Notes: generated by a model not told the origin, from the letters alone. Counted from the first letter of the whole stretch, positions 7,338 through 63,685 are shown. The stretch: 63,798 bases of DNA, filler included, from Octopus bimaculoides (GCF_001194135.2; 5 parts of 5 records of this genome joined end to end with filler, not necessarily neighbours in it), one strand, 5' to 3'. Made by a program: numbers and translations.

Positions 7338-8089
7338 AATGCATTGCCGTGATAATTATCCTTATCATTTTCTTCTGCTTCCTCTTTTTCTCAGAAGAAG
7401 AGATTCAAAAAAGAAAGGAGGGAATGGATGGGGGAAACAAGTCCAAAAATATATGTTAATTAGTTAGGCTCTGCGTCATTCTGTCATGAAGTTGAAACCA
7501 AACCAAATCCATAAACATGTGTTCGATTTCCTGTTTGTAACAACGTTTGGAAAACTGAATTTCAAACCAATGCTATGAATTTCTGATGTTCATTATCCAT
7601 TGTCACCCGATGCCGTTTCAGTATTTCGATATTAGCCCGAGTATTCCTAATCTCTGCCTATCCGTTTCTCTTTTCTCAGTATGGTAGTGAGAGACTGTGT
7701 ACTGCGATATTTTCAACTGGGTGAAAATATTCCACAAGATTTAATCATTATTGACGCAGGTGTGACCGTATTATAAGTTGCTTACTTTCCAACTACATGA
7801 TCCCAGTTTCAGTCCCACTGCATCGTACCTTGGGCAAGTGTCTTCTACTATAGCTTCGGGCTGATCAAAGCCTTTTGATAGTATATGATGAACGGAAACG
7901 TCCGCCGTATATGAAGTAACTTTGACGAAAGTAGCATTAATTTTCTAGGTCGTTCAACTTTGTTCAATGGCTCAGTGGGCCGATTGAATGAACCATTCAA
8001 TAACGAATCTATAACGATTACTTGAACAGCTGTAAGTCAAATTTACTATAATAAAGAAAAATATGTAATGATTATCATTTGTGCCCATT

Positions 8090-9060
8090 CTCCCTCTACA
8101 TAGAAAATAACTGGAAGAGATACCTGGATGACTTTCATACTTTGGCATGAAAGTATAGAGAGACTTAAAGCATTGCAAGCACTTATAAATGGACTTGATG
8201 TAACCAGTCAATTCACGATGGCAAATAGCCATCAACAACTTCCCTTCCTCGACATCCTCATTAAGAAATCTAACAACGTAATAAAAACAGATATATACTA
8301 TAAGCCCACGGACTCCAAGCAATATCTACCGTTCAACTCATGCCACCCCAGACACACCAGAATGAATATCCCCTTCGACCTAGAAAAAAGGATATGTACT
8401 ATAGTTTCTAATGCAAGCACCAGGGACACACGACTACATGGACTAAAGGATACACTCATCACCAGGAACTACCCACCTTCACTAACTGACATATGCTTTC
8501 AAGGTGCCCTACAACTCATGATCCACGAACTCAGACATCCCAAATTAAAGAAGGATTTACAATCAAAGCTTGTGATGCCTATAGCTGAGTCCACTCTGCT
8601 GCAAGCATTCGTCTGAGGTATCTCCTTCGACAATAACCCATAAGTAGCAGTTTTTTCATCCCTTTGCCCCTCGTATCTCCACGATGCCCTGAAAAAGTTA
8701 TTGATCTTGACCTTCATCCTCTGACTAAGCAATAAAAGCAAAATGGTATTTGTTCAGCAAACTGAAATCAGAATATCGTGAAGCACATTCTACCGCTGTT
8801 GAAGAGAAATAAGCTGTTTCAATTCATTTCATTTCAGGTACACTGCTAAAGCTCCTGGGAAGATATAAAGATCAGAACATTCTCATTTTCCAGTTAATAT
8901 ACAAACTTTATAACAGATGTTAGAAATCAATATCAAACAAAGAAGATAATCGTTAGAAAGTTATGAAAAACGAATAAATCACATGAACAGGAATTCAATC
9001 TAAAGTGTTTGCAACAAACCCACCAAAGCGAATATACATGGAATTTACTGATGAAACAAA
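8090..9060 (+). mobile_element. Penelope-like element, RT fragment and decayed 3' end
   Basis: WKRYLDD, LPFLDILI, TDIYYKPTDSKQYLPFNSCHPRH motifs typical of PLE reverse transcriptase. Confidence 0.88.
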
Positions 9061-10849
9061 GCAATGGTGGCTTGTCGTGTCTTGTGGTTGTTCATACTTC
9101 CATCTGTTAGACGCAAACTATGTTTGGTGTTGATAAATTGAACAAAAATAGGAATTACTTAAGTCTTGTCAAGAAAAACCAGAAAAGAAAATAATGATAT
9201 ATAAATGGTTATTTATATGCAGAGAATGAGATTGATAGGTTGCTTATTTGCTTAGTTACTGAGTTTACTGGATAGCTCGCTTGCCAGCATGACTGGTTGG
9301 TGAGATGGCATGTCCACATACAACCGCAGATAGACGATCTATCAGTATGCAAACGAGGAAAACAAAGTTTACAGGAAAGAAGAAACAAGCGGAGAAATAC
9401 AGCAAAATCAAAAACAAAACAGCAAAGCTGCATAATATTTAAAAGGTGTTATGCTAGACATATCAATAAAAGCTGTGAGTAAACATGGGAAGATGAAAGA
9501 GAATGCATACACACGGACATATAGATATGTATTTATACATATATATGCATATATATATACATAGATATGTGTATACAAACACACATACACATGTATATAT
9601 ACATATATGTGCACACTCATGAATATGCATGTAAATCTAAACCATCACAAACATACACAATAAACTAGTGCGTGTGAGCAAGTGCCTATATAGGTATACA
9701 CACACATGCATACAAGCGCGCACACACTAATACACACGCACATACACACGCACACACACACACACAGACATATATATATATATGAGGGAGAGAGAAAGAG
9801 AGAGATGTATTAGTAAATATATAAATACATAAATACATACATACTTCTATATCATCTGCGTACCTTTGTGTTTAGGCATGCATATGTAATCCTCCGTCGG
9901 TGTTTGAGGCTATATATATCGAACAGGCAATGACAAGTGAATGAATCTAATATACAGTCAGTTTGAAAATAGATAGATCAAAAATAGAATTACCATAATA
10001 GTAAACATGGTTTAGGGTTTAAGAAAACATGTTGATCTATAGACAGAAACGGTAACTTGTATAATATTAGCTGACAAAACAATCTCGACGTATATTATGT
10101 TCAGAATCTTCTGTACGAAAAAGAAAAACGTTGATAAATGCTCCATCGCCACGTTTTGCTTACTTCAAATAAAGAAAAGAAAACGAAAAATTAAAAAAAA
10201 AGGAAAAGAAATAATTACGGACAAAATGAGAGTAGAGAATATAAGAAAATAGGCAATACTGGACAAATTTCAGATATGTAATAGTTTTGTGGACTTGTAA
10301 ATTGCATTTTTTTCTTGGTGTAGTAAAGAACAGAAATAGATGAGTTACGCTGGTAACCTATATCTGTATTCGAATACATCTCATCAGCCATGTACTACAG
10401 AAGTGCTTTTCTTGGACTATATTTTGCCCTTCTCTCCGAATATTTGCTCCCTCCTCTTTCTCACGGAGAGCTATGCTCGAAACATCACACACACCCACTT
10501 GTTTCCATCTTATACTAAGTATCAAACTGTGTACGTCCTTCGGACTTATGCCGTTTTTGTTTTTATTTTTATCTTCGATTTGCCTTTACATACCATACAT
10601 ACATACATACGTACGTACATACATACATACATACATACATACATACATACATACATACATACAAAGAAGAACACAAGTAGGGTTTGAATTTCCTGCCGCT
10701 GTTTCGGTAGAACTTTATTGATGTATTCATACATTACATCATAGCATATATCCATCTTCAGGTTGATGCGCCTAGATTCTAATGGATCCTATAACTAATT
10801 CGTGTGCCTCTGTGTGTGTGTGTGTGTGTGTGTGTGTATTGCATCTCTT

Positions 10850-51330: not shown

Positions 51331-51603
51331 TAGGTGCAGTCACGATCCTGTATATTGCACCTCTCAGCGTTTGGTCGTTTGGAATGAGCCAAAAGAAGTC
51401 CGCCATTTTGATGTCACTTCTAGGATTATTCACAACCATTGGTGAAATCTTCCTTGGTGTGTTTGTTGATTTGCTTCATTTTAAAAGCAACAACTTATAC
51501 ATCTTCTCTCTGCTAATATTCGCTATTACTACCATAATGATGCCATACTGTTACACCTTCCAGTACATCGCTCCTGTAGTCTGTATCTACAGTGTAGCAC
51601 ATG
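51331..51603 (+). CDS. SLC16/MCT-like MFS transporter paralog A, internal exon (about TM7-TM10), 273 bp, phase 1-1
   Basis: Acceptor ...ctttattttatcacag| and donor CATG|GTGAGT. Encodes (V)GAVTILYIAPLSVWSFGMSQKKSAILMSLLGLFTTIGEIFLGVFVDLLHF...MMPYCYTF...SVAHG. About half identical, with the same length and phase, to the exon at 58449-58721. Confidence 0.88.
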
Positions 51604-52455
51604 GTGAGTTTATAATATTATTAACATCATGAAATTAATGAAAATATTTCAATAAATTATAATAAATACGATTCTATGTTCGAAATATTGATGTTTTAAT
51701 TTTGGACGAATTATTAATCAAATCTGCACACATATGTGTTGATAGTGGTTTGCCTAGTCTTAATATTTTCTTTTTAATTTCTATACCTGTCCGTCTCAGG
51801 TTTGACTCAAGCACTTTTAAGCAATCTATATATTTCGTAAGAAAAATATACTTTTGCTCTATCTTATAGACTGCACTAACGGAAAAAGAATTCTTAGGCA
51901 TTTCTACTAAGAACATCTCTATATCATCTAGGGACACATATATGGAATCTCTTCTACAGAAAACCACTGAATTTATAAACAGATTAAGATGGCGACATTT
52001 TTTTTACGAAGCTATGTTCAATATATTAACATATGTTTTAATTTTGGACGATTTTTTTCTTAATCAAATCCGCACAATTGTGTTGATAGAGGTTTGCCGA
52101 ATCTGAATTTTTTCCTTGTATTTTTTATGTCTACATGTGTGTATGTATAATATATATATATAATTTTGGCAAAAGACCAGGAATTTTAGGTGAAGCGTTA
52201 AGTCGATAGCATCGACCCCAGTGCTCGGCATCTACTTATTTTATCTCATCCCTCAGAGGATGAAATGCAGAAGCGACCTCGGCAGCATCTGAATTCAGAA
52301 TGTAAAACCAGACGAAACACCGCTAAGCATTTTGTCCGGCGCAGCAATGATTCTTCCAGCGCGCAACCATCATTCTGTTAGACTCTTTTATGATTCCATT
52401 AATTTTATGCTTTAGACATATAATGGTCAGTGGTTCTATTCTTCGTTTACTCCAG

Positions 52456-52581
52456 GGTTTATTGTTTCACTCAGACTGGTGCTAACCACTGAAGCCGTTG
52501 GCATACAACATTCAACAAAGGCATACAGTTTTGTAAGTGTCACCAGTGGAATTGCGGGTTTATTTACCCCTCCACTTTTTG
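52456..52581 (+). CDS. SLC16/MCT-like paralog A, internal exon (TM10-TM11), 126 bp, phase 1-1
   Basis: tttactccag| acceptor and G|GTAAGT donor. Encodes GFIVSLRLVLTTEAVGIQHSTKAYSFVSVTSGIAGLFTPPLFG, with the SLC16-type G-x-A-x4-PP motif. Not present in the ORF track. Confidence 0.88.
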
Positions 52582-52848
52582 GTAAGTACATCAAAGTTAT
52601 TCTTTAAAATATTCCTCTAAATTAATATAATTACCAAATTAATACACAGTTTCTGTGTGCCTTTTCCTTCCCTATCGCTCTGCTTTTTTTCATTTACAAA
52701 ATAATGGTTTCAAATTTTGGATCAAGGCCAGGAATGCATACATACATACATACATACATACATACATACATACATACATACATACGTACATACATACATA
52801 CATACATGTATATTGATATATGAATGTTCATGTAATATTCATATATGA

Positions 52849-52889
<41 letters not shown>

Positions 52890-52899
52890 NNNNNNNNNN

Positions 52900-52937
<38 letters not shown>

Positions 52938-53613
52938 CTATAACACACACGCACACATATATATATATACACACACTCGTATATATATACTTGCGTGTCT
53001 TTGTGTTTATCCCCACACCTGACGGCTTGACAACCGGTGTTGGTTTGTGTACGTGCTCTTAATCTAGCAGTTCAGCCTAAGACTCCGATAGAATACTCAC
53101 TAAGCTTTAAAATAAATACTGAGGACGGTTTGTCCGACTAAGCGTTTCAAGGCTGTGCCGTAGACTGGCCGCGGTCTTTTAACTGAAACAAATAAGATAT
53201 GCAAGATTATATTGACAAGATACTCTACCGAGGTAAATCATAACATAGCTAAAGAAAGCAGACAGAAATAAATGATAACATTGTCAGCGCAATTATATTG
53301 ATCCAAATAATTAGCACTGTCTCTTTATTTGTTATTTGTTGCACGGTTCAGCTATTGGACTGCGGCCATACTGGGGCACCACCTAGATGTGTTTGGTCGA
53401 ACAAATCTATGCAAATACTTATTCTAAAATCTGTTACTTATTCTATGGACTTCTTTTGTTGAACCACTGAGATACAGGGGCCAGTCGATTAGATCGACCA
53501 CAGTACGCAACTGGTACTAAATTTATCGATACCGAAACGATGAAAGTCAAATTCGACCTCGGCGGAATTTGAACTCAGAACGTAAGGACAGGCGACAGAC
53601 GAAATACTGCTAA

Positions 53614-53990
53614 GCAATCGAAGTCGCATGTCGAGGGTTTGTTGGACACAGTGTGAAGCGACTGTTGTTATCGTTAGGCCTAACTCATCGTAAGGTAAAT
53701 GCCACCATGACCGATATCCAAACCACAGCGGAGAAGGCTAGCCACTGGATTGGGTTAAAAAGAGACGATGAGCGATGACTAGAGAAATATTGAGCTTTGT
53801 TTTTAATAAACAGTTGATCTAGCATGCGGGGCCTCATATCAGTGAGGTGGGGCCGGTGCGCATTGATCCCGTCGAGAGGTGGTCCCCGAAACGGCGTGCT
53901 TTCTCTCCTTATGACCCCATAAACTTACTGGCTTCCGGTTTGCGGAGTTCTCGACTGGTAGCACCTGCGTGTGCAAGTTGTTAGCAAAAC
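53614..53990 (+). mobile_element. 3' end of a restriction-like-endonuclease non-LTR element (HERO/NeSL-like) in an intron of paralog A
   Basis: AIEVACRGFVGHSVKRLLLSLG...TAEKASHWIGLKRDDER* (53614-53778) matches the EVGCRGF...AE-x-AS-x-W-x-W-x-KR pattern. Confidence 0.7.
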
Positions 53991-54073
53991 ATTCAATAGC
54001 ATAGATCAATGTTCGAAAATTATAATGATGCGAAATTTTCCATGTTTTTAGTGAAACTCGTTTATCCTTTTAG

Positions 54074-54195
54074 GACTGGTTTACGACGTCACCGGATCGT
54101 TTCTGATTGTCTTCTGTGGAGCTGGCTTTTGTTCTTTAATTGGACTAGTGTTTATTTTGACAGTAGTTTTACGTAATAAGTTTTCTGTCAAATGA
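54074..54195 (+). CDS. SLC16/MCT-like paralog A, last coding exon (TM12 and stop)
   Basis: tttatccttttag| acceptor, phase 1. Encodes GLVYDVTGSFLIVFCGAGFCSLIGLVFILTVVLRNKFSVK*, matching the SLC16 C-terminal G-x2-(Y/F)D-x-TG-x-(Y/F) motif. TGA at 54193-54195. Confidence 0.88.
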
Positions 54196-54359
54196 ATTAT
54201 ATTTTAGAAATTGTTGTTCGTGTTTTGTTTTTGAATATGACTTCGTTTATATGAAGTTGTTGTGAAGCTCTTGTCGAATGACTATAAATAATATACTATA
54301 TGTGTGTATTTTTGCGCGTGTTGAAAACCGGCTCCCTCCTCAGTGGAAGATTTATAATA

Positions 54360-55639
54360 TTAGGTCGTCAAGTATGAAATTTGTTATAAGGTATATGATA
54401 AACTTTGACAGCTGCTCATTTTGTGCCATTATTATATTTTAACAACCTTTATCTTTTGCTAGAAAGCTGACACATCAATTTCTTTATTCTAACTCATCTT
54501 GCGCTTTATAAAGTATTTATAAATCGTTTTTTGCTATTTTTGTTTAGCGATGGATAAGTTAGAAATTCGTACAGATTTGAAATATGAGTTCTTTCTTGGA
54601 AATACAGCATCACAAACAGCTCGGAATATTAATGGAGTATTTCATACTAATTTTATTATACAGCAGACAGTATCAAATTGGTTTGCAAAATTTCGTTCTG
54701 GTAACTTTGACCTCACAAATGAGCAACGCGGTCGACCAGAAACAAAGGTGGATAATGACGAACTGAAAGCCACAGTCGAGTCAGATCCATCCCCAAGTGC
54801 CCGTGAATTATCGTTGTTGTTTGGTGTTAGCAAGCAAATAATATTGACTCAGCTGGTTCAAATCGGTAAAGTGAAAAAAGTTGGATAATTGGGTTCCACA
54901 TGAACTCAATGAAAATCAGAAACATCAACGTTTGGAAGCCTGCATTATTTCTCGTCATAAAAATGAATCATTTTTAAATCGAATTGTAACATGTGATGAG
55001 AAATGGATCCAATACAACAACCGTAAACGTTCAGCACAATGGTTGGACAAAGACGAGTCACCAAAAGACAGTCCAAAAAGCAAAATTCATCAAAAGAAGC
55101 TGATGGTGTGTGTTTGGTGGTCTGGCGCAGGTGTGATCCACTATGATTTCATTAAACTTGGCTCATCAATCACGGCCGAAGTATACTGCAGCCAACTGGA
55201 GCAAATGATGCAGAAATTTACAAAAAACAGCCTAGATTAGTCAACAGACCCTCTCCTATTTAATTGCAAGACAACGCCAGACCACACATCGTAAAAATGA
55301 CATTGGCGAAACTCCAGGAGTTGGAATTGGAAGTTCTCCATCATCCACCATACTCACCTGATATTGATACCCCCACTTACCCCCACTTCTTCCAGAATTG
55401 GAATAACTTTTTGATTGGAAAAAATTTAATTCCGACGATGCTGTAAAACAGGCCTTCCAAGATTTTATTGACTCCAGATAGCCAGCTTTTACAATCCCGG
55501 GCTGGACAAGCTACCGCTGAAATGGCAAAAGTGTATTGACAACATGGGAGCATACTTTGATGAATAAAACTATTCCTTGTTTTCATAAAACATTAGCAAA
55601 CTTTTTTCTTTTCTGCAAATCTCATACTTGACGACCTAA
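54360..55639 (+). mobile_element. Full-length defective mariner
   Basis: TIRs TTAGGTCGTCAAGTATGA(A/G)ATTTG flanked by TA; 1280 bp. Transposase split into three ORFs containing WVPHEL, VTCDEKW, QDNARPH and YSPD. Confidence 0.93.
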
Positions 55640-56323
55640 TAATTAACGACCTAATTGACGACCTAATAATTAACAAATAGAAGAGTCATACATACATACA
55701 TACATACATGCATACATTCATAACGATTGCCTCATCCTATCCGATGATAACGGTCTTACATTCAGCAACTTTGCTCTGGTTTTCTTTCATCTTTGCATGT
55801 CCGCAGAAATGACTGCATCCATCACGATGGGACTTTATAAAGTACAAAACGGATCAAGAAATGAAACGAACAATGAAACATTTGTTCGTTCTAAGATTTA
55901 AGTGACACTAACTTGTACGACAGTTTTGCCACCCCCTCGGTCACCACAGTAGGTTCCAACAACAAAAATTGCAACATGACTGGTACTCTTTTGGCGGTAA
56001 GTTTCTGTTAGAGTGTCTTCTCCTAGAAGAGCTGCATTCCCTAAGGCTTTGTTAAAAAGAACGCGAGCCTCCTCTTCTACCCTTCTATTTAATTCGTAGA
56101 TAGGACCCAGACAGGTATTACTGTCCAGATTCAGAACAGACCAGTGAATAATGGTAATTAAGGGTGACTCAAAGCTCCCCAGAACTCCCGAACTGTAGCT
56201 TAATGCCATATCCATGACATTCATATACACATACAAACAAGGAAAATAATATGAAAGCCTTGAAAATGCGCTAATTTTTTATACATATATACGTTGGAAG
56301 AAAACATAAGAGGTAAGAATTTT

Positions 56324-56360
<37 letters not shown>

Positions 56361-56634
56361 AAAAATACAAAAATATGTTATCATATAATAAAAGACTTTA
56401 CGTAACATCTTATTTTGCCATAAGATTGAAAATCTTTATTGAGACGATAAATTTTGAATTGAGAGATATTTTACAAGTAATTCTAGCATTTCTTATATCT
56501 TTATAGTGATTCACTCATTGAATTAAATATCTCCTGTTTAGACCTTAAATCGTTCATCTTTTAAAGATCGATCTTATTGATTAATAGAAAAATTAACAGT
56601 TTAAAAAACAAAGAAAAAAATTAGAGAACAGTGT

Positions 56635-56765
56635 TTATTTCTGCAGACGTTTTTTACATGCACCGCGAAAGCAAATTAAAATCATTAAGATTAATGAAGT
56701 AAACGCGCATGCTCCACCTAAATAAAAAACCATGACAAATGATTTTGTGACGTCAAAAATCAGTC
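56635..56765 (-). CDS. SLC16/MCT-like paralog B, last coding exon (TM12 and stop)
   Basis: catttttaatttcag| acceptor, phase 1. Encodes GLIFDVTKSFVMVFYLGGACAFTSLILMILICFRGACKKRLQK*. TAA at 56637-56635. Confidence 0.88.
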
Positions 56766-57925
56766 CTGAAATTAAAAATGATTTCATTCATTAAATTGAA
56801 AATTATTTTATATTTCGTTTGCATAGAGTGACGTTACCCCCACCTCATTAAATCTTTCAGATATTAATTGTCAAAAGTTCATTTACTCTTTCATTCAACT
56901 GTTAATATCTTCTATACTAACTGCAGAATATAAACAGAACAAATAATTTCTAATAACTCCTACCCACTGGGGATGGAGTAAGTAGGTAACCTCAAGTTAA
57001 TAATTTTTTTTTTCTATAGCAGAATATGGCTCACACCATGAGGCCAAAAATCAATCCAGTTTTCAAATCATTCGTATACATTTTATCCGACAAAAAACAT
57101 CAAAATTGTCCACCGTTTTCCTCATTACTAAAATTGCAATTAGCTAATATACAATTAACTATGCTGAATAAGCAGCTTGAGGAGGCGTCTTCCTGGGGTT
57201 CAAATAGCAGTGTCGTCTATTTTTATAGAATACCCGCGTTTAGATGGCAATAAACATTATTCTCATTACTTCAACAGATTTCAACACTAGCGTTCGGGAA
57301 ACAGCATGCTTGTTATGTCTATCATCATCATAGACACAAGTAGTCAACTGTTACTTTTCTATCGAACATTGAGTAAAGGAAAGCATTGTTGATCGTTTTA
57401 ATAATATTGATTTCAAATTTTGGAGCAAGGCCGGTAATTGTTTTGTGGGGGAGGGGGAGATTAGGCAATTGTGTCGACCCCAGTATTCTCTTTCATCGAC
57501 CCCAAAAGGGTGAAAGCCAAACTTGACTTTGGTGGGAATTGAACTCAAAAACGTAAAATCGGAAGGAAAAGTGTCATGTATTTTGCCCAACGAATTAATA
57601 ATTCTACCATCCCACCTTAGCTACTTCAGCAAAATTTCTTTCTACTAAAGTCACAAAGCCTGAAATTTATTTTTGTTTTTTTCTTTTGGTGGGGTGAGGG
57701 TACTAGTCGATTCCATCAACCCCAAAGTTCACTGGTACTTAATTTATCGACCACGAAAGGATAAAAGGTACAATCGACCTCGGTAGAATTTGAACTCAGA
57801 AAGTGAAGCAAACGAAATCCTGCTAAGTATTTCGCCCGGCGTGCTAACGATTCTGCCAGCTCAATAATGCCTTCGGCTCGTCTACTCCCTACTTGATAGT
57901 ATTTTAGTAATATTAATGAACTTAC

Positions 57926-58051
57926 CAAACGTAGGAGGGGAAGCGAAATAGCCAATTCCACAGAACACACTTAGAATACTGAATGCTTTTGTGGACGCTT
58001 CTAAACCAGCTACGTCTGTTGTGAGGACCAGTCTGAGAGATACTCCTAAAC
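57926..58051 (-). CDS. SLC16/MCT-like paralog B, internal exon (TM10-TM11), 126 bp, phase 1-1
   Basis: tttcaatttattccag| acceptor and TTTG|GTAAGT donor. Encodes GLGVSLRLVLTTDVAGLEASTKAFSILSVFCGIGYFASPPTFG. Confidence 0.88.
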
Positions 58052-58448
58052 CTGGAATAAATTGAAAAGAGAAGACCAGAATAGTATATTCATAATTTGA
58101 CGATATATTGGCAGAGGTTATGTTCTTGGTCCATAGGAAATTCAAAACTCTGTATAATAAACATTTTCATTCAGAAGGAATTTTCGTTCCACTTTCTTTG
58201 TTTATTACTCTTTTACTTGTTTCAGTCATTTGACTGTGGCCATGCTGGAGCACCGCCTTTAGTCGAGCAAATCGACCCCAGGACTTACCCCAGAAGAATA
58301 CGTTCACAAAGACGCATATATTTATATCCCTAATACTCTTTTAAGACTTATGCAAGACATGGGAGGATCTGATAATGCTTCTCAAACTGTTTGCTTTTAC
58401 GTGAATGTAGTTAATATATAATCATAAAAACGGGTTTCACAAACTTAC

Positions 58449-58721
58449 CAATCGCAAAGCCAAAAATACTTGTTACGCAAGCCATGAGTATAAAGTGGTT
58501 ACAGAAAGGCATCATTGCTGAGGTAATTGTGACAAGGAACAATGAGAACATGAAGACCTTCTTGCTGCTAAAGTGAAACACATCAACAAATACTCCGAGT
58601 AACAGTTCACCAATAGTTGTACAAAATCCCAGAATAATCATGAGGACTGCAGACGTCTTTTGGCTCATTCCAAATGACCAAACACATAGGGGTGGTATAA
58701 AGGTGCACAAGGCCGAAGAAC
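58449..58721 (-). CDS. SLC16/MCT-like paralog B, internal exon (about TM7-TM10), 273 bp, phase 1-1
   Basis: ctattttag| acceptor and ATTG|GTAAGT donor. Encodes SSALCTFIPPLCVWSFGMSQKTSAVLMIILGFCTTIGELLLGVFVDVFHF...MMPFCNHF...FGFAIG. Confidence 0.88.
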
Positions 58722-59573
58722 CTAAAATAGAGTTCATATACATACATGCATATATATATATATATATAATATATATATATATACATANNNNNNNNNNNNN
58801 NNNNNNNNNNNNNNNNNNNNNNNNNNNNNNNNNNNNNNNNNNNNNNNNNNNNNNNNNNNNNNNNNNNNNNNNNNNNNNNNNNNNNNNNNNNNNNNNNNNN
58901 NNNNNNNNNNNNNNNNNNNNNNNNNNNNNNNNNNNNNNNNNNNNNNNNNNNNNNNNNNNNNNNNNNNNNNNNNNNNNNNNNNNNNNNNNNNNNNNNNNNN
59001 NNNNNNNNNNNNNNNNNNNNNNNNNNNNNNNNNNNNNNNNNNNNNNNNNNNNNNNNNNNNNNNNNNNNNNNNNNNNNNNNNNNNNNNNNNNNNNNNNNNN
59101 NNNNNNNNNNNNNNNNNNNNNNNNNNNNNNNNNNNNNNNNNNNNNNNNNNNNNNNNNNNNNNNNNNNNNNNNNNNNNNNNNNNNNNNNNNNNNNNNNNNN
59201 NNNNNNNNNNNNNNNNNNNNNNNNNNNNNNNNNNNNNNNNNNNNNNNNNNNNNNNNNNNNNNNNNNNNNNNNNNNNNNNNNNNNNNNNNNNNNNNNNNNN
59301 NNNNNNNNNNNNNNNNNNNNNNNNNNNNNNNNNNNNNNNNNNNNNNNNNNNNNNNNNNNNNNNNNNNNNNNNNNNNNNNNNNNNNNNNNNNNNNNNNNNN
59401 NNNNNNNNNNNNNNNNNNNNNNNNNNNNNNNNNNNNNNNNNNNNNNNNNNNNNNNNNNNNNNNNNNNNNNNNNNNNNNNNNNNNNNNNNNNNNNNNNNNN
59501 NNNNNNNNNNNNNNNNNNNNNNNNNNNNNNNNNNNNNNNNNNNNNNNNNNNNNNNNNNNNNNNNNNNNNNNNN

Positions 59574-59633
<60 letters not shown>

Positions 59634-62002
59634 ACCGTGTTGGACCTCTTTTTAGGTGCAAAATATACTGTCATGTGACACTAATGTACAGATGCAGCGG
59701 GAAACGTACAGAGGTTATAAACTTAATCATGTGTTCATTCTCTACAAACACCTGACAGAAAATAGTCAAAGCATTGATTGTTTGGACTTGTTGACTCAAC
59801 CATGTCAGTCTTAACTTTCGACGCCTGACTATGTCACTTGATAATAACACACAGACGTAGCAGGGAACTTACAAACATTTCTAAGACCAATCAAATCCTT
59901 TTGGACAATCTTCAGGAGTCTTGGAGGTCAGCCAATCTTGGCAAAGATTTTGAACAGGCCTATTCAAAACATATACTAATTTGAGCCATGAACTCACTCT
60001 AAAAGTAGGGCAAGCTTCAAACACTAGTCAGAAGCAAGATAGCTGCGACATAAACCACATGTTTCTATTTGACCTTTTTGAAAATCAGCGTAAACTGAAA
60101 CCGGTTACAGTTTCATATATTTTAATAAAAAATATATCAATTATTCTCAGTGCATTNNNNNNNNNNNNNNNNNNNNNNNNNNNNNNNNNNNNNNNNNNNN
60201 NNNNNNNNNNNNNNNNNNNNNNNNNNNNNNNNNNNNNNNNNNNNNNNNNNNNNNNNTATTTCCTACATGGTTGTTTATCACTTAGACACGCACACACACA
60301 CACGTATCGATGTAGACAAAATCATTTATCATGTAGTTAGCCACACGAATACCAATAAAGGTTTTGGTATCAGTATAGAGACACAGCGATTAAATATTTA
60401 GAGAATGACGTAGGTGGGGGTGGGAATAGCCATAGCTGATTCTTGATATGAAACCTGGTTAATGAAGTAATTACTCACATACTTAGTATAATGAGTAAAG
60501 AAAACGTAATTAATTAAGATAACACAGTGAAGTGAAAAATTAATTACAATAATGAAAATAATTTGATATTGGATGCATTGAGAATTGTGTCTGACTTTCA
60601 GCTGTGACAACTGGTGATATGTTTCGATCTTATTGGTGTTCATCAGCGAAACATTGTCTTTAACTGTTAATGTGATATATTAGATGACAGAGACATATAA
60701 GAAATGTTAATAAATGATCACAGAGGTAGGAGTGATAAGGTAGGAGAATCACGGATGGCTTTTAGAGGAGAACAACCTAGAAAGTAGACCCTAAATGAAT
60801 TCCTTTGGTAAGCCTTTATATTCTAATTAAAATTACAACATTAATAAGTATAATTTTTTTTAACTACACAAAATTCGTACTCAATCCACAAATATGAAGT
60901 ATGTGACGAGACAAATATCATTGGATTAGTCTGTGTCGCTTGCTTGGGATTTTCCAAATATTCAGGTTATATAAATATGACGAGAAATAAATAGAAAATA
61001 GAAAAACGTGAGCCCTAAGTAGAAATATTTCTCTCTATTGCAAAGAGAGAAACAACTATTTTATATTTTAATTCCGTATAAGCACACGAAGCAGTTATGA
61101 TCGAAATAATGATGTGTATATTTATTTTTAACAGGTCTGTAGAGAGAGCTGTGTTCTCCAACATAAAATACCGCAACGAATGCATTTCACATTTTGACGT
61201 TCAGGAACGTGTTGTGAATAAGCATACACATTATTTATCTGTAGTTCATCAAAGTTTTGTCACAATTTTACAGTTTTCTGACCTTTATCTCTCCTAATTG
61301 GGCAGTTATCACAATCATTTACAAGAGATCATATTCCAACAGTTACCTTTTATCTTTTACCTGTTTCAGTCATTAGACTGCAGTCATGCTGGGGCATCGC
61401 TCTGAAGAATTTTCGTCGAGTGAATCGATCTCAGTACTGTTTTAAATCTTGGTATTTTTTCTGTTGGTCTCCTTTGCTGAACCACTAAGTTACGGGGACA
61501 TAAACACACCAGCACCAGGTGTCAAACGGTTGTAGGGGACAGATACAAACACGCACACACAGATAGATAGATNNNNNNNNNNNNNNNNNNNNNNNNNNNN
61601 NNNNNNNNNNNNNNNGTTTCCATCAAGCAAATCCACTGGACCTGAGGCCATAGTTGAAGACACTTGTCCAAAGCGCTACACAGTGGGAGTGAATCCGGAA
61701 CCTTGTGGATGGAAAGAAAACTTCTTATCACACACGAATGCCTGTCACAATTATCCCGGATAACATAAACACATTCACTGAAATNNNNNNNNNNNNNNNN
61801 NNNNNNNNNNNNNNNNNNNNNNNNNNNNNNNNNNNNNNNNNNNNNNNNNNNNNNNNNNNNNNNNNNNNNNNNNNNNNNNNNNNNATATATATATATATAT
61901 AAGTGACCGTATTATGTCAGCTTTCATAATGCGTAAGTTTTGAACTTAGAAAATGCATAAAATCATTCGAATAACACCAGCAGCAGCAGCCGTAGCTGCA
62001 GC

Positions 62003-62066
<64 letters not shown>

Positions 62067-62071
62067 CTCAC

Positions 62072-62240
62072 ACACCCAACCAACGTAGGCCATCGTGAGC
62101 AGCACAAAGTCGATATTTCTAAAATTCTTAGCTCCAATTGAAATTGATCGGCGTTCCACTACTGAATTTCTATGTAGTCTCTGCTTGTTTATAATGGTTT
62201 CATCTTTGATGCCACTTTTATCTGCTGGTGGAGGACTCTG
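62072..62240 (-). CDS. SLC16/MCT-like paralog B, exon with the end of the central loop and start of TM7, phase 0-1
   Basis: ttttatcaattttag| acceptor and GTGT|GTGAGT donor. Encodes QSPPPADKSGIKDETIINKQRLHRNSVVERRSISIGAKNFRNIDFVLLTMAYVGWV. Resembles the (L/F)-(K/R)-N-x2-F entry into SLC16 TM7 and joins the 58721 exon in phase. Confidence 0.72.
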
Positions 62241-63685
62241 CTAAAATTGATAAAATAACATATTCTTTACATAAAAAATTTAAACAAAGAGGTGCCCCAA
62301 CATGGCCGCAGTCAAATGAGTGAAAGAAGTAAACGAATAAAAGAATAAAAATATCATTTCATACATCAAGGGTTTTACAAGGGTCTCCTGTCTATTTCGT
62401 GTATTGTTCGTTCATGCTTTTTCTTTTCGTTTCATGATACGGACAAGTATAATATCGAACACAGAAACAGTTTCGTAACTTGAAACATTTGAACGCGTAT
62501 TATTTGTGGAGGGATATATTTTGTGCTGAGTCAATGGTGATAATTATACGAATATGAAATATCGTTAATTACGTTTTCCTAATTGACAAAAAAGAAAGAA
62601 AAATATTTCAGTGAATGTGTTTATGTTNNNNNNNNNNNNNNNNNNNNNNNNNNNNNNNNNNNNNNNNNNNNTTAATTAATTAANNNNNNNNNNNNNNNNN
62701 NNNNNNNNNNNNNNNNNNNNNNNNNNNATGTTAGTTTCATATGCAGTTTATTAATTCTATGACAAATGGGCTCTTCAACCAAAAGTTTTATTTTTTGCAG
62801 GCATGGCAGTGTGATTAAGAAGCTTGCTCCCTAACTGTTTAATCTCAGATTCAGTATCATTGTGTGGCACAAGAGTCTTCTGTTATAGCCTCAGGCCAAC
62901 CGGAACCTTGTGAGTGGATTTAGTTGACAGAAACTGAAAGAAGCCCAGTGCATGCGCGTGTGTGTGTGCAAATAGATGTATGATTCCTATTTTTGAGTTT
63001 AGAGCCCCAAGTAGATTATCATCATCCAGTCTGCTTCCAGTATAGTGGTTTAGTTGCTACTATATTTAATAGCATTACTACTATATACAGGAAGTAAATG
63101 TAGGATAAACACAAGTTTATACCATTTGTTCATAAGTTTTTTTCAGTATTGAACATATGGGAGAAAATGAGGTTAGGGCTGAGAATATTTGAAACCACTG
63201 CTGAGTCGAGATACTTGTTGTATTTCAGATATATTGACTACATACTTCCTTGTGCTAACAGGTTAATGAATAACACAAGGTGTTTTCCTTGATAAGTTAT
63301 GTGTTTCATATGGAATTATCATGAGAGAATAAGAAGACAGTTTGCTGTTACCTTTCTTCAGATATTCTTTATAAAACACAAGCTAGAAACAAGTTGACCA
63401 CGCCTGCCTGGGCACTTGGAACATAATGGTCCAGAACAAATACAAGGTATTTTGTTCAACACTAACAATTCAGTTAACCTATTACTCTAGACAAGTACTT
63501 TATTAACTCTGGAAGGATGGAAAGCAAAATTAACATTGGTGTGACGTGAACTCACAATGTAAAGCATTGAAACAAGCTGCAAAGTATTTTGTTTAAGATT
63601 AACAATTTTGTCATTTTTGTCAATTACGTAAAGATATGGTGGGGATTATAATAAAAACATTGCAAAGATAACAAGTGAACGGTAC

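What the first reader, a model, noticed from the sequence alone, without database searches (positions are those of the whole stretch)
51331..58721. Both SLC16-like paralogs replace the TM8 Arg with Glu and carry an Arg in TM10
Seen: TM8 reads TTIGEIFLGVFVD in paralog A and TTIGELLLGVFVD in B; TM10 reads VSLRLVLTT(E/D) in both. These stretches are conserved although the rest of the exon is only about half identical. Established: SLC16 TM8 usually has Arg here (the GR motif; human MCT1 R313 binds the carboxylate, and MCT8 R445 pairs with TM10 D498). Inference: by ungapped alignment the new Arg lies 7 residues after the D498 position, on the same helix face. The pocket charges therefore look inverted, suggesting a lineage-specific subfamily with a different substrate (amines, cations or zwitterions) or different proton coupling.
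Basis: partly seen in the sequence, partly recalled or inferred. Interest (0 to 1): 0.75.

Follow-up and report, generated by a model that had tools for sequence, protein, structure and literature searches.

The report
Octopus SLC16 transporters with relocated arginine
Two neighbouring octopus genes of the monocarboxylate-transporter (SLC16) family lack the usual substrate-binding arginine in helix 8 and carry an invariant arginine in helix 10; this is real and typical of a cephalopod gene cluster, but loss of that arginine is already known in other SLC16 carriers, so it is a moderately interesting variant rather than a new kind of transporter.

Summary
The piece is Octopus bimaculoides chromosome DNA. 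It carries the C-terminal halves (TM7-12) of two convergent SLC16 genes with canonical splice sites. The 10-N gap lies in an intron, inside a (TA)n run, and does not touch coding sequence.

Three independent alignments put the Glu of TTIGE on MCT1 R313 / MCT8 R445. They put the Arg of SLRL seven residues after MCT8 D498, which is MCT1 L374.

- The Glu is not conserved. The O. sinensis ortholog of paralog A has Asn, and other clade members have Gln, Lys or Leu.
- The TM10 Arg is invariant. It also occurs together with the TM8 Arg in many mollusc SLC16 proteins, so it is probably inherited rather than a swap.
- Loss of the TM8 Arg is not unique: human MCT12 has Asn, platypus MCT9 has Lys, and an arthropod group has Glu.

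Best reading: a cephalopod-restricted, tandemly expanded SLC16 subfamily. It is not an MCT1-type proton/lactate carrier, because K38, D309 and R313 are all absent. The TM10 Arg is probably the anion-binding residue, paired with a polar TM8 residue. The substrate is unknown and is most plausibly a zwitterionic or organic-acid metabolite.

The parts
51331..51603 (+). Paralog A exon encoding TM7-TM9 and the start of TM10 (273 nt). It enters with a split codon.
   Evidence: Acceptor cacag|TA, donor CATG|gtgagt. The translation is GAVTILYIAPL...SVAHG. It is 100% identical to UniRef protein P0001.
51432..51470 (+). Paralog A TM8 motif TTIGEIFLGVFVD. The Glu codon GAA is at 51444-51446, on the MCT1 R313 / MCT8 R445 column.
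52456..52581 (+). Paralog A exon encoding TM10-TM11 (126 nt). VSLRLVLTTE is at 52464-52493 and the Arg codon at 52473-52475, on the MCT1 L374 column.
   Evidence: Acceptor ctccag|GG, donor TTTTTG|gtaagt. Column assignment.
52890..52899 (.). Assembly gap (10 N) inside a (TA)n run in intron 2 of paralog A. It is non-coding.
   Evidence: The orthologous intron in O. sinensis is of similar length.
54074..54195 (+). Paralog A last coding exon (TM12 and stop codon).
   Evidence: Acceptor ttttag|GA. The translation is LVYDVTGSF...RNKFSVK*.
62072..62240 (-). Paralog B exon encoding the end of the TM6-7 loop and the start of TM7 (169 nt).
   Evidence: The translation is QSPPPADKSG...MAYVGWV, with donor GGGTGT|gtgagt. 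The NCBI model P0002 starts inside this exon.
58449..58721 (-). Paralog B exon encoding TM7-TM9 and the start of TM10 (273 nt). TTIGELLLGVFVD is at 58620-58582 and the Glu codon at 58608-58606.
   Evidence: It matches P0002.
57926..58051 (-). Paralog B exon encoding TM10-TM11 (126 nt). VSLRLVLTTD is at 58043-58014 and the Arg codon at 58034-58032.
56635..56765 (-). Paralog B last coding exon (TM12 and stop codon).
   Evidence: The C-terminus ...RGACKKRLQK* equals that of P0002.

Best explanation
The finding covers the C-terminal domains (TM7-12) of two convergently oriented members of a tandemly expanded SLC16 subfamily found so far only in cephalopods. The sources label its members 'MCT9-like', 'MCT12-like' or 'MCT14'.

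In this subfamily all three residues of the MCT1-type proton/lactate machinery are gone:
- K38 is Thr, Ser or Asn.
- D309 is Thr or Ala.
- R313 is Glu, Asn or Gln.

The only mid-membrane charges are the TM8 Glu (or its polar replacement) and an invariant TM10 Arg.

The most likely history is as follows. An ancestral mollusc SLC16 had Arg in both TM8 and TM10. The cephalopod lineage lost the TM8 Arg and kept the TM10 Arg.

The inferred mechanism is that the TM10 guanidinium projects into the central cavity close to where the TM8 Arg normally sits and takes over binding of the substrate's anionic group. The TM8 Glu/Gln/Asn hydrogen-bonds or salt-bridges to it between transport cycles. This is a TM8-TM10 pair like R371-D424 of MCT8, with the polarity reversed.

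The proteins are therefore probably facilitative, not MCT1-style proton-coupled, carriers. Their substrate is probably an organic acid or a zwitterion, by analogy with the Arg-less carriers MCT12 (creatine) and MCT9.

Shown here: gene structure, alignment columns, conservation pattern, taxonomic spread, SLC16 fold. Inferred: cavity exposure, the Glu-Arg pairing, substrate class, and absence of proton coupling.
For: **Gene structure.** Established.

**SLC16 identity.**
- Best solved-structure matches by sequence are MCT10 (2e-7), MCT8 and MCT1.
- Pfam assigns MFS_1.
- The AF2 model of the O. sinensis ortholog of paralog B has pLDDT 77 and pTM 0.75. Its top Foldseek hits are MCT1 7yr5 (TMt 0.93) and MCT10 9hhq (0.91).

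**Columns.**

**Family pattern.**
- The Arg is invariant in 12 of 12 octopus sequences. The TM8 residue is E8/N2/Q2.
- The wider clade, with Q, K, L or E in TM8 and always Arg in TM10, forms one group in a neighbour-joining (NJ) tree. Its named members are Octopus, Argonauta and Acanthosepion.

**Ancestry of the TM10 Arg.**
- It co-occurs with the TM8 Arg in Ostrea, Mytilus, Ylistrum, Batillaria and Octopus P0057.
- These are the next-best BLASTP relatives after the cephalopod clade.

**Position of the two residues.**
- They are the only mid-membrane charges. In the model's DSSP helices, Glu360 is 9 residues from the cytoplasmic end of TM8 and Arg419 is 8 residues from that of TM10.
- Rat MCT1 Leu367 (the same column as human L374) hydrogen-bonds the inhibitor AR-C155858 together with Arg306 and Ser364 in published MD simulations (PMC4357239).

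**Selection.** dN/dS against the O. sinensis orthologs is 0.42 for A and 0.32 for B.

**Precedent.** Arg-less SLC16 carriers of zwitterions exist: MCT12 has Asn (PMC9982067) and MCT9 has Lys.
Against: - No coordinates were available. Cavity exposure and Glu-Arg contact therefore rest on helix periodicity, helix-end counting and a published homology/MD model, not on measurement.
- The NJ tree is crude. It does not place the mollusc group with both Arg as the immediate sister of the cephalopod clade, so the TM10 Arg could be convergent.
- No member of the clade has been assayed, and no expression data were examined for these two genes.
- In the assembly, paralog A has a 1-nt deletion in an upstream exon outside the window. 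Paralog B lacks an exon, apparently in an assembly gap. Neither gene is demonstrably intact in this genome build.
- The TM8 segment of A evolves fast between the two Octopus species, with 11 nonsynonymous against 3 synonymous changes in 36 codons.
Confidence: 0.6

Rival explanations
1. One reading: the pocket charges are inverted, with an acid where the carboxylate-binding Arg was. The subfamily has therefore switched to cationic or amine substrates, or to a different coupling ion, and the Glu is the key substrate-binding residue.
For: - The Glu is exactly on the R313/R445 column.
- It is the only acidic residue in the membrane core.
- Most octopus paralogs (8 of 12) keep Glu, and a transcript-derived clade member, P0049, also has Glu.
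- An arthropod 'MCT9-like' group independently has Gly-Glu at the same place.
Against: - The acid is not conserved, even between orthologs: Glu in O. bimaculoides A and Asn in O. sinensis A.
- Gln, Lys and Leu occur in the wider clade.
- The invariant residue is the Arg, which would repel cations.
- The Arg was present in relatives that still have the TM8 Arg. The pattern is a loss, not a swap.
Confidence: 0.15
2. The TM10 Arg is structural or part of the gating network. It would pair with the TM8 Glu/Gln/Asn or with the motif-A Asp at the cytoplasmic end of TM8 to hold the C-domain together, as D424 does in MCT8. Substrate recognition would then be mainly hydrophobic or polar and would not depend on charge.
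For: - In MCT8 the TM8-TM10 pair (R371-D424-Y339) stabilises the C-domain, and D424 does not bind substrate (PMC12078798).
- The Arg lies in an invariant block SLRL..TT(E/D), which is typical of a packing or gating element.
- The Asp at the end of TM8 (MCT1 N321 column) is invariant.
Against: - In MCT1 the same helix face of TM10 (rat F360, S364, L367) lines the ligand path (PMC4357239).
- A buried unpaired Arg, as in the paralogs with Asn, Gln or Leu in TM8, is costly unless it meets a substrate anion.
Confidence: 0.15
3. These are decaying or relaxed duplicates. In a fast-evolving tandem array, one or both window genes would be pseudogenes, and the TM8 change would reflect lost constraint rather than new function.
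For: - Paralog A has a 1-nt deletion that shifts the frame in its TM6 exon in the assembly.
- The databases hold only half-length models for both genes.
- The TM8 segment of A has dN/dS of about 1.1.
- At least 5 paralogs lie within 100 kb.
Against: - All seven window exons are open with canonical splice sites.
- dN/dS over the C-terminal halves is 0.32-0.42, and 0.32 for A outside TM8.
- The O. sinensis orthologs are full length.
- B's break is explained by a missing 3n+2 exon next to a 2013-N gap.
- The motif pattern is shared by the whole clade, including full-length transcript-sized contigs.
Confidence: 0.1

Closest known systems
Vertebrate MCT12 (SLC16A12) and MCT9 (SLC16A9), facilitators of zwitterions (creatine; carnitine/creatine)
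   Same: - They are SLC16 proteins that naturally lack the TM8 Arg. Human MCT12 has Asn (PMC9982067) and fish MCT12-B-like has Asn. Platypus MCT9 has Lys in 'TTVGKLLLGVLAD', which is strikingly like the octopus 'TTIGELLLGVFVD'.
- None has Asp at the D309 column (fish MCT12-B-like excepted).
- NCBI names the octopus genes after these two.
   Different: - Identity to platypus MCT9 is only about 26%.
- They do not group with the cephalopod clade in the NJ tree.
- They have no Arg at the TM10 L374 column: MCT9 has Phe and MCT12-B has Ile.
MCT8/MCT10 (SLC16A2/A10), thyroid hormone and aromatic amino acid transporters
   Same: - They are the best sequence matches among solved structures.
- They have a TM8-TM10 ion pair in the C-domain (R371-D424) facing the central gate (PMC12078798).
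- They have no K38 or D309.
   Different: - The polarity and register are reversed. Octopus has Glu/Asn/Gln on the R371 column and Ile/His/Leu/Asp/Ser/Asn on the D424 column, with the Arg 7 residues further along TM10 (MCT8 M431).
- Tyr339 of the MCT8 network is Pro in octopus (my reading of the sequences).
MCT1-4 (SLC16A1/7/8/3), proton-coupled lactate/pyruvate transporters
   Same: - The fold is the same: the AF2 model matches MCT1 7yr5 with TMt 0.93.
- The family signatures are shared (DGGWGW, YFxKRRALA).
- The TM10 Arg column equals rat Leu367, on the ligand-lining face with Phe360 and Ser364.
   Different: All three essential charged residues K38, D309 and R313 are replaced. Identity is about 22%.
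Mollusc/lophotrochozoan SLC16 group with Arg in both TM8 and TM10 ('GITNTxGR' plus 'SLRTIV'), uncharacterised
   Same: - The TM10 'SLR' motif sits at the same column.
- These are the next-closest relatives by BLASTP, at about 30% identity.
- One member (P0057) lies on the same Octopus chromosome record as the window.
   Different: They retain the TM8 Arg and have Asn at the D309 column. They are widespread in bivalves and gastropods rather than restricted to cephalopods.
Arthropod 'MCT9-like' group with Gly-Glu in TM8 (mayfly, copepod), uncharacterised
   Same: It has Glu on the R313 column.
   Different: It has Thr, not Arg, at the TM10 column ('NYSLTS'). It forms a separate clade in the NJ tree.

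Membership tests
SLC16 (monocarboxylate transporter family, MFS) | 12-TM MFS fold with a long cytoplasmic TM6-7 loop | tested here: met
   The AF2 model of ortholog P0004 has 12 long helices and a disordered stretch at 211-289. Its top 14 Foldseek PDB hits are all MCT1, MCT2, MCT8 or MCT10. The window itself encodes only TM7-12. TM1-6 of paralog B lie in the flanking locus L001.
SLC16 (monocarboxylate transporter family, MFS) | Signature [D/E]G[G/S][W/F][G/A]W leading into TM1, and YFxK[R/K][R/L]xLAx[G/A]xAxAG in TM5 (signatures recalled from the SLC16 literature) | tested here: met
   Paralog B's upstream exons encode PDGGWGW and YFDKRRALAIGINNCGGG. The second signature is met only loosely at its end. 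Both lie outside the window.
SLC16 (monocarboxylate transporter family, MFS) | Closest sequence relatives are SLC16 members | tested here: met
   phmmer against the PDB gives MCT10 at 2e-7, MCT8 at 8.5e-7 and MCT1 at about 4e-3, with no other transporter family. The named homologs are all 'monocarboxylate transporter ...'.
SLC16 (monocarboxylate transporter family, MFS) | Conserved TM8 Arg (MCT1 R313 / MCT8 R371) that binds the substrate carboxylate | tested here: not met
   Both window paralogs have Glu. The feature is not universal in accepted SLC16 members: MCT12 has Asn and MCT9 has Lys. This does not exclude family membership.
Proton-coupled lactate carriers MCT1-4 | The charged triad K38 (TM1), D309 and R313 (TM8) | tested here: not met
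   The octopus family has Thr/Ser/Asn, Thr/Ala and Glu/Asn at these columns; the separately aligned Gln-bearing C-terminal fragments have Leu at the D309 column and no TM1. The K38 column could be read only for paralog B, from its flanking exon, and for the orthologs.
MCT8/MCT10 type | The R371-D424-Y339 network linking TM8, TM10 and TM7 | tested here: not met
   The R371 column is Glu and the D424 column is His (A) or Ile (B). The Tyr339 position is Pro, by my reading of the TM7 alignment.
Arg-less zwitterion facilitators (MCT12 / MCT9) | Orthology to SLC16A12 or SLC16A9 | tested here: inconclusive
   They share loss of the TM8 Arg, and the TM8 motif is MCT9-like. However, identity is only 26% and they do not group together in the NJ tree. 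No rigorous phylogeny was run.
Arg-less zwitterion facilitators (MCT12 / MCT9) | Transport of creatine or carnitine without proton coupling | not testable with these tools
   This needs uptake assays.
Cephalopod Arg-less / TM10-Arg SLC16 clade (defined here) | A non-Arg residue on the R313 column together with Arg in a TM10 'SLR' motif on the L374 column | tested here: met
   Both window paralogs and all 12 octopus sequences meet it. So do Sepia, Argonauta and unnamed Logan members.

The most novel reading that the evidence does not exclude
The cephalopod-specific clade could be the missing carrier family for guanidino or opine metabolites that cephalopods use in place of creatine and lactate. 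These include arginine, which cephalopods use in phosphorylated form (arginine phosphate) as their energy store, and octopine, their anaerobic end product.

In this reading the TM10 Arg binds a substrate carboxylate and the TM8 Glu/Gln/Asn binds the guanidinium or amine. The tandem expansion would have diversified substrate range or tissue use.

This is my own speculation from general cephalopod biochemistry. It rests only on the analogy with MCT12 and MCT9 (creatine/carnitine) and on the clade's taxonomic restriction. Nothing here tests it.
Probability: 0.07. Interest if true: 0.7.

Novelty: new variant of a known kind. Interest (0 to 1): 0.35.

Why it matters
The TM8 arginine is treated as the hallmark carboxylate-binding residue of SLC16 transporters.

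This clade replaces it with Glu, Gln or Asn while keeping a strictly conserved arginine on a neighbouring helix. That makes it a natural experiment on two questions: whether the anion-binding site of an MFS carrier can move between helices, and what determines substrate class in the many orphan SLC16 members.

It also flags a cephalopod-restricted, tandemly expanded transporter cluster whose substrates are unknown. If the substrates proved to be lineage-typical metabolites, this would fill a gap in cephalopod physiology.

As it stands, the result is a sequence-level variant in annotated 'MCT9/12-like' genes. Known precedents exist for loss of the arginine.

Tried and rejected
1. **Gap and reading frame.** I tested whether the 10-N gap could break the reading frame. 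It cannot, because it is intronic.
2. **First homolog search.** The 172-aa fragment returned only 3 hits because of the word index. I rebuilt a 454-aa paralog B from the flanking locus and searched again.
3. **Direct geometry test.** Structure prediction returns no coordinates and none are stored in /data. The distance between the Glu and the Arg, and their cavity exposure, could not be measured. I fell back on helix-end counting and published MCT1/MCT8 data.
4. **A charge swap between TM8 and TM10 in one step.** Rejected as the history, because relatives carry both Arg.
5. **Orthology to MCT12-B, as the NCBI name suggests.** Not supported by BLASTP rank or by the NJ tree.
6. **Profile search with the word index to extend the clade to other cephalopods.** It added one unnamed Gln+Arg sequence and two gastropod proteins that have the TM8 Arg. 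No Nautilus or squid names were obtained.
7. **Literature search for cephalopod SLC16 work.** It found only a general report of mollusc MCT expansion (PMC11939762). It found nothing on these residues.

Full report
**What is in the window**

The piece 50980-62627 is identical to part of Octopus bimaculoides chromosome record CM046620.1 (GCA_001194135.2). That record was fetched as locus L001, and it carries the same gaps.

The piece holds two convergent gene ends.
- Paralog A (+) has exons 51331-51603, 52456-52581 and 54074-54195.
- Paralog B (-) has exons 62240-62072, 58721-58449, 58051-57926 and 56765-56635.

All exons have AG/GT borders. The two internal exon lengths (273 and 126 nt) and the splice phases are the same in both genes. 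The translations equal database proteins: P0001 is a 155-aa fragment of A, and P0002 is B, named 'monocarboxylate transporter 12-B isoform X2'. A and B are 48% identical over 172 ungapped residues.

The 10-N gap at 52890-52899 lies in a (TA)n run within intron 2 of A. That intron is 1492 nt here and 1551 nt in O. sinensis. The gap has no bearing on the coding sequence.

**Check of the observation**

Three alignments agree on the columns.
- HMMER alignments to solved MCT10 and MCT8 chains place the Glu of TIGE on the Arg of GVGRLL/GLGRLV. This is MCT8 R371, which is R445 in long-isoform numbering. They place the Arg of SLRL seven residues after MCT8 D424 (D498), on MCT8 M431.
- MAFFT alignments of 45 and of 150 sequences used human MCT1 as reference. 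I verified that reference as 100% identical to PDB 6lyy_A. They give MCT1 R313 for the Glu and MCT1 L374 for the Arg.

MCT8 D424 aligns with MCT1 F367, which is rat F360. The octopus Arg column is therefore rat Leu367.

**The family**

A search with a rebuilt full-length paralog B found a set of Octopus paralogs that are 50-77% identical.

In O. sinensis at least five of them lie within 100 kb. The arrangement with A and B converging on each other is conserved there.

Across 12 octopus sequences only 25 of 171 C-terminal columns are invariant.
- The TM10 Arg is invariant.
- The TM8 position is Glu in 8, Asn in 2 and Gln in 2.
- Notably, the O. sinensis ortholog of paralog A has Asn (GAA to AAT).

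An exhaustive HMMER scan of 1.84 billion cluster representatives gave 1712 hits at E<=1e-3 but only four at E<=1e-30.

Among the 149 nearest representatives:
- The R313 column is R 100, E 15, Q 15, N 4, K 4, M 3.
- The L374 column is R 51, T 51, K 10.

In a neighbour-joining tree, the sequences that lack the TM8 Arg but have the TM10 Arg mostly fall in one clade. Their TM8 residue is E, Q, N, K or L. The named members of that clade are Octopus, Argonauta hians and Acanthosepion pharaonis.

Sequences with both Arg ('GITNTxGR' plus 'SLRTIV') come from oysters, mussels, a scallop, a gastropod and Octopus itself, on the same chromosome record. They are the next-best BLASTP relatives after the cephalopod clade.

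A separate arthropod group has Gly-Glu in TM8 without the TM10 Arg.

**Comparison with known carriers**

- In MCT8 cryo-EM structures R371 binds the thyroxine carboxylate. In the resting state it is salt-bridged to D424, which also holds Tyr339. R371 is described as equivalent to MCT1 R313 and as highly conserved (PMC12078798).
- The Arg is not universal. A study of MCT1 chose the R313N mutant because Asn is the natural residue in human MCT12, a creatine carrier (PMC9982067).
- In my alignment a fish MCT12-B-like protein has Asn. Platypus MCT9 has Lys in a motif, TTVGKLLLGVLAD, that is very like the octopus one.
- MCT7 keeps K38 and R313 but lacks D309, and it is pH-independent (PMC8980330).
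- The octopus family lacks all three: K38 is T/S/N, D309 is T/A, and R313 is E/N in the full-length paralogs; the two Gln-bearing sequences are separately aligned C-terminal fragments with Leu at the D309 column. An MCT1-type proton/lactate mechanism is therefore unlikely.

**Structure**

An AlphaFold2 model of P0004, the full-length O. sinensis ortholog of B, has pLDDT 77 overall, about 90 in the helices, and pTM 0.75. It is most similar to MCT1 7yr5 (TMt 0.93) and MCT10 9hhq (0.91).

Coordinates are not exposed. I could not measure whether the Glu and the Arg touch or whether they face the cavity.

Three indirect arguments bear on this.
- They are the only charged residues in the membrane core of the family.
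- In the model's helices, Glu360 lies 9 residues from the cytoplasmic end of TM8 and Arg419 lies 8 residues from that of TM10. They are therefore at similar depth.
- The Arg is at i+7 from the D424/F367 column, and so on the same helix face as rat F360 and S364. In published simulations, rat Leu367 hydrogen-bonds an inhibitor together with Arg306 and Ser364 (PMC4357239).

These arguments make a cavity-facing TM8-TM10 pair plausible. They do not prove it.

**Interpretation**

The pattern is best described as loss of the TM8 Arg in a lineage that kept a pre-existing TM10 Arg. The TM8 residue is free to be Glu, Gln or Asn. This points to the Arg as the functional residue, probably the anion-binding one. 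The TM8 residue would be its polar partner.

It does not point to an acid-based cation site.

The substrate is unknown. By analogy with MCT12 and MCT9, a zwitterionic or organic-acid metabolite carried without MCT1-type proton coupling is the most reasonable guess.

**Status of the two genes**

dN/dS against the O. sinensis orthologs is 0.42 for A and 0.32 for B, which indicates purifying selection. Within A, the TM8 segment has 11 nonsynonymous against 3 synonymous changes in 36 codons.

Outside the window, A's TM6 exon carries a 1-nt deletion in the assembly.

B's N-terminal and C-terminal halves are annotated as separate proteins, P0254 and P0002. This is because a 3n+2 exon, which encodes 44 residues in O. 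sinensis, is missing, presumably in a 2013-N gap.

Whether A is intact needs resequencing.

**Novelty and score**

Mollusc SLC16 expansion by tandem duplication is published (PMC11939762), and Arg-less SLC16 members are known.

I found no description of the specific cephalopod pattern, a variable polar TM8 residue with an invariant TM10 Arg. It is a new variant of a known kind. It is moderately interesting and testable by standard transport assays.

Noticed in passing
window 54358-55641 (+): A Mos1-type mariner transposon remnant of 1284 bp with 26-nt terminal inverted repeats (96% complementary). Its broken ORFs hit the Pfam families HTH_48 and Transposase_1. It sits about 165 bp downstream of paralog A's stop codon, between the two convergent genes.
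   Followed up: partly
L001 about 24216-23944 (minus strand), outside the window and upstream of paralog A: Paralog A's TM5-6 exon has an apparent 1-nt deletion in a Thr codon (AGA GGG AC- CTT ATT). This shifts the frame into a stop. The O. sinensis ortholog is intact. It is either a real pseudogenising change or polymorphism, or an assembly error.
   Followed up: partly
L001 1734-10022 and gap 7454-9466 (window side: beyond 62627): NCBI splits paralog B into a 229-aa N-terminal protein (P0254, ending in out-of-frame AESSTSR*) and the 183-aa P0002. Exon 3 ends in phase 1 and the next visible exon starts in phase 0. A 3n+2 exon, which encodes 44 residues in O. sinensis P0004, is missing, probably in the 2013-N gap.
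   Followed up: partly
L002 (O. sinensis CM016876.1, 101.7 kb): At least five SLC16 paralogs of this subfamily lie within 100 kb on both strands, and the convergent A/B pair is conserved. The NCBI model P0008 fuses the C-terminal half of one gene to the full A ortholog across about 80 kb.
   Followed up: partly
window 51373-51480 (paralog A TM8 segment) compared with L002 87561-87668: Between the two Octopus species, the TM8 segment of paralog A has 11 nonsynonymous and 3 synonymous differences in 36 codons. The rest of the C-terminal half has dN/dS of 0.32. In O. bimaculoides this segment resembles a neighbouring paralog (P0010/P0005) more than it resembles the positional ortholog. Gene conversion or a local shift in selection are both possible.
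   Followed up: no
window 51016-51070, 51225-51283, 52744-52806, 52850-52935, 61999-62063; SINE-like 58212-58287: The introns and flanks are dense in microsatellites: (AAT)n, (ACAT)n, (TA)n around the gap, and a (GTA)n run directly after the donor site of exon B0. There are also SINE-like repeats shared with other parts of the locus. Several N gaps (58789-59573, 60158-60256, 61574-61615, 61786-61884) all lie in the intron between B's exon at 62240-62072 and its exon at 58721-58449.
   Followed up: no
alignment A3 (representative search hits): Many insect SLC16-like proteins that keep the TM8 Asp...Arg pair carry Arg or Lys on the MCT8 D424 / MCT1 F367 column of TM10. Another group has Lys on the L374 column ('SQK'). 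Positive charges on the cavity face of TM10 therefore recur in invertebrate SLC16 proteins.
   Followed up: no
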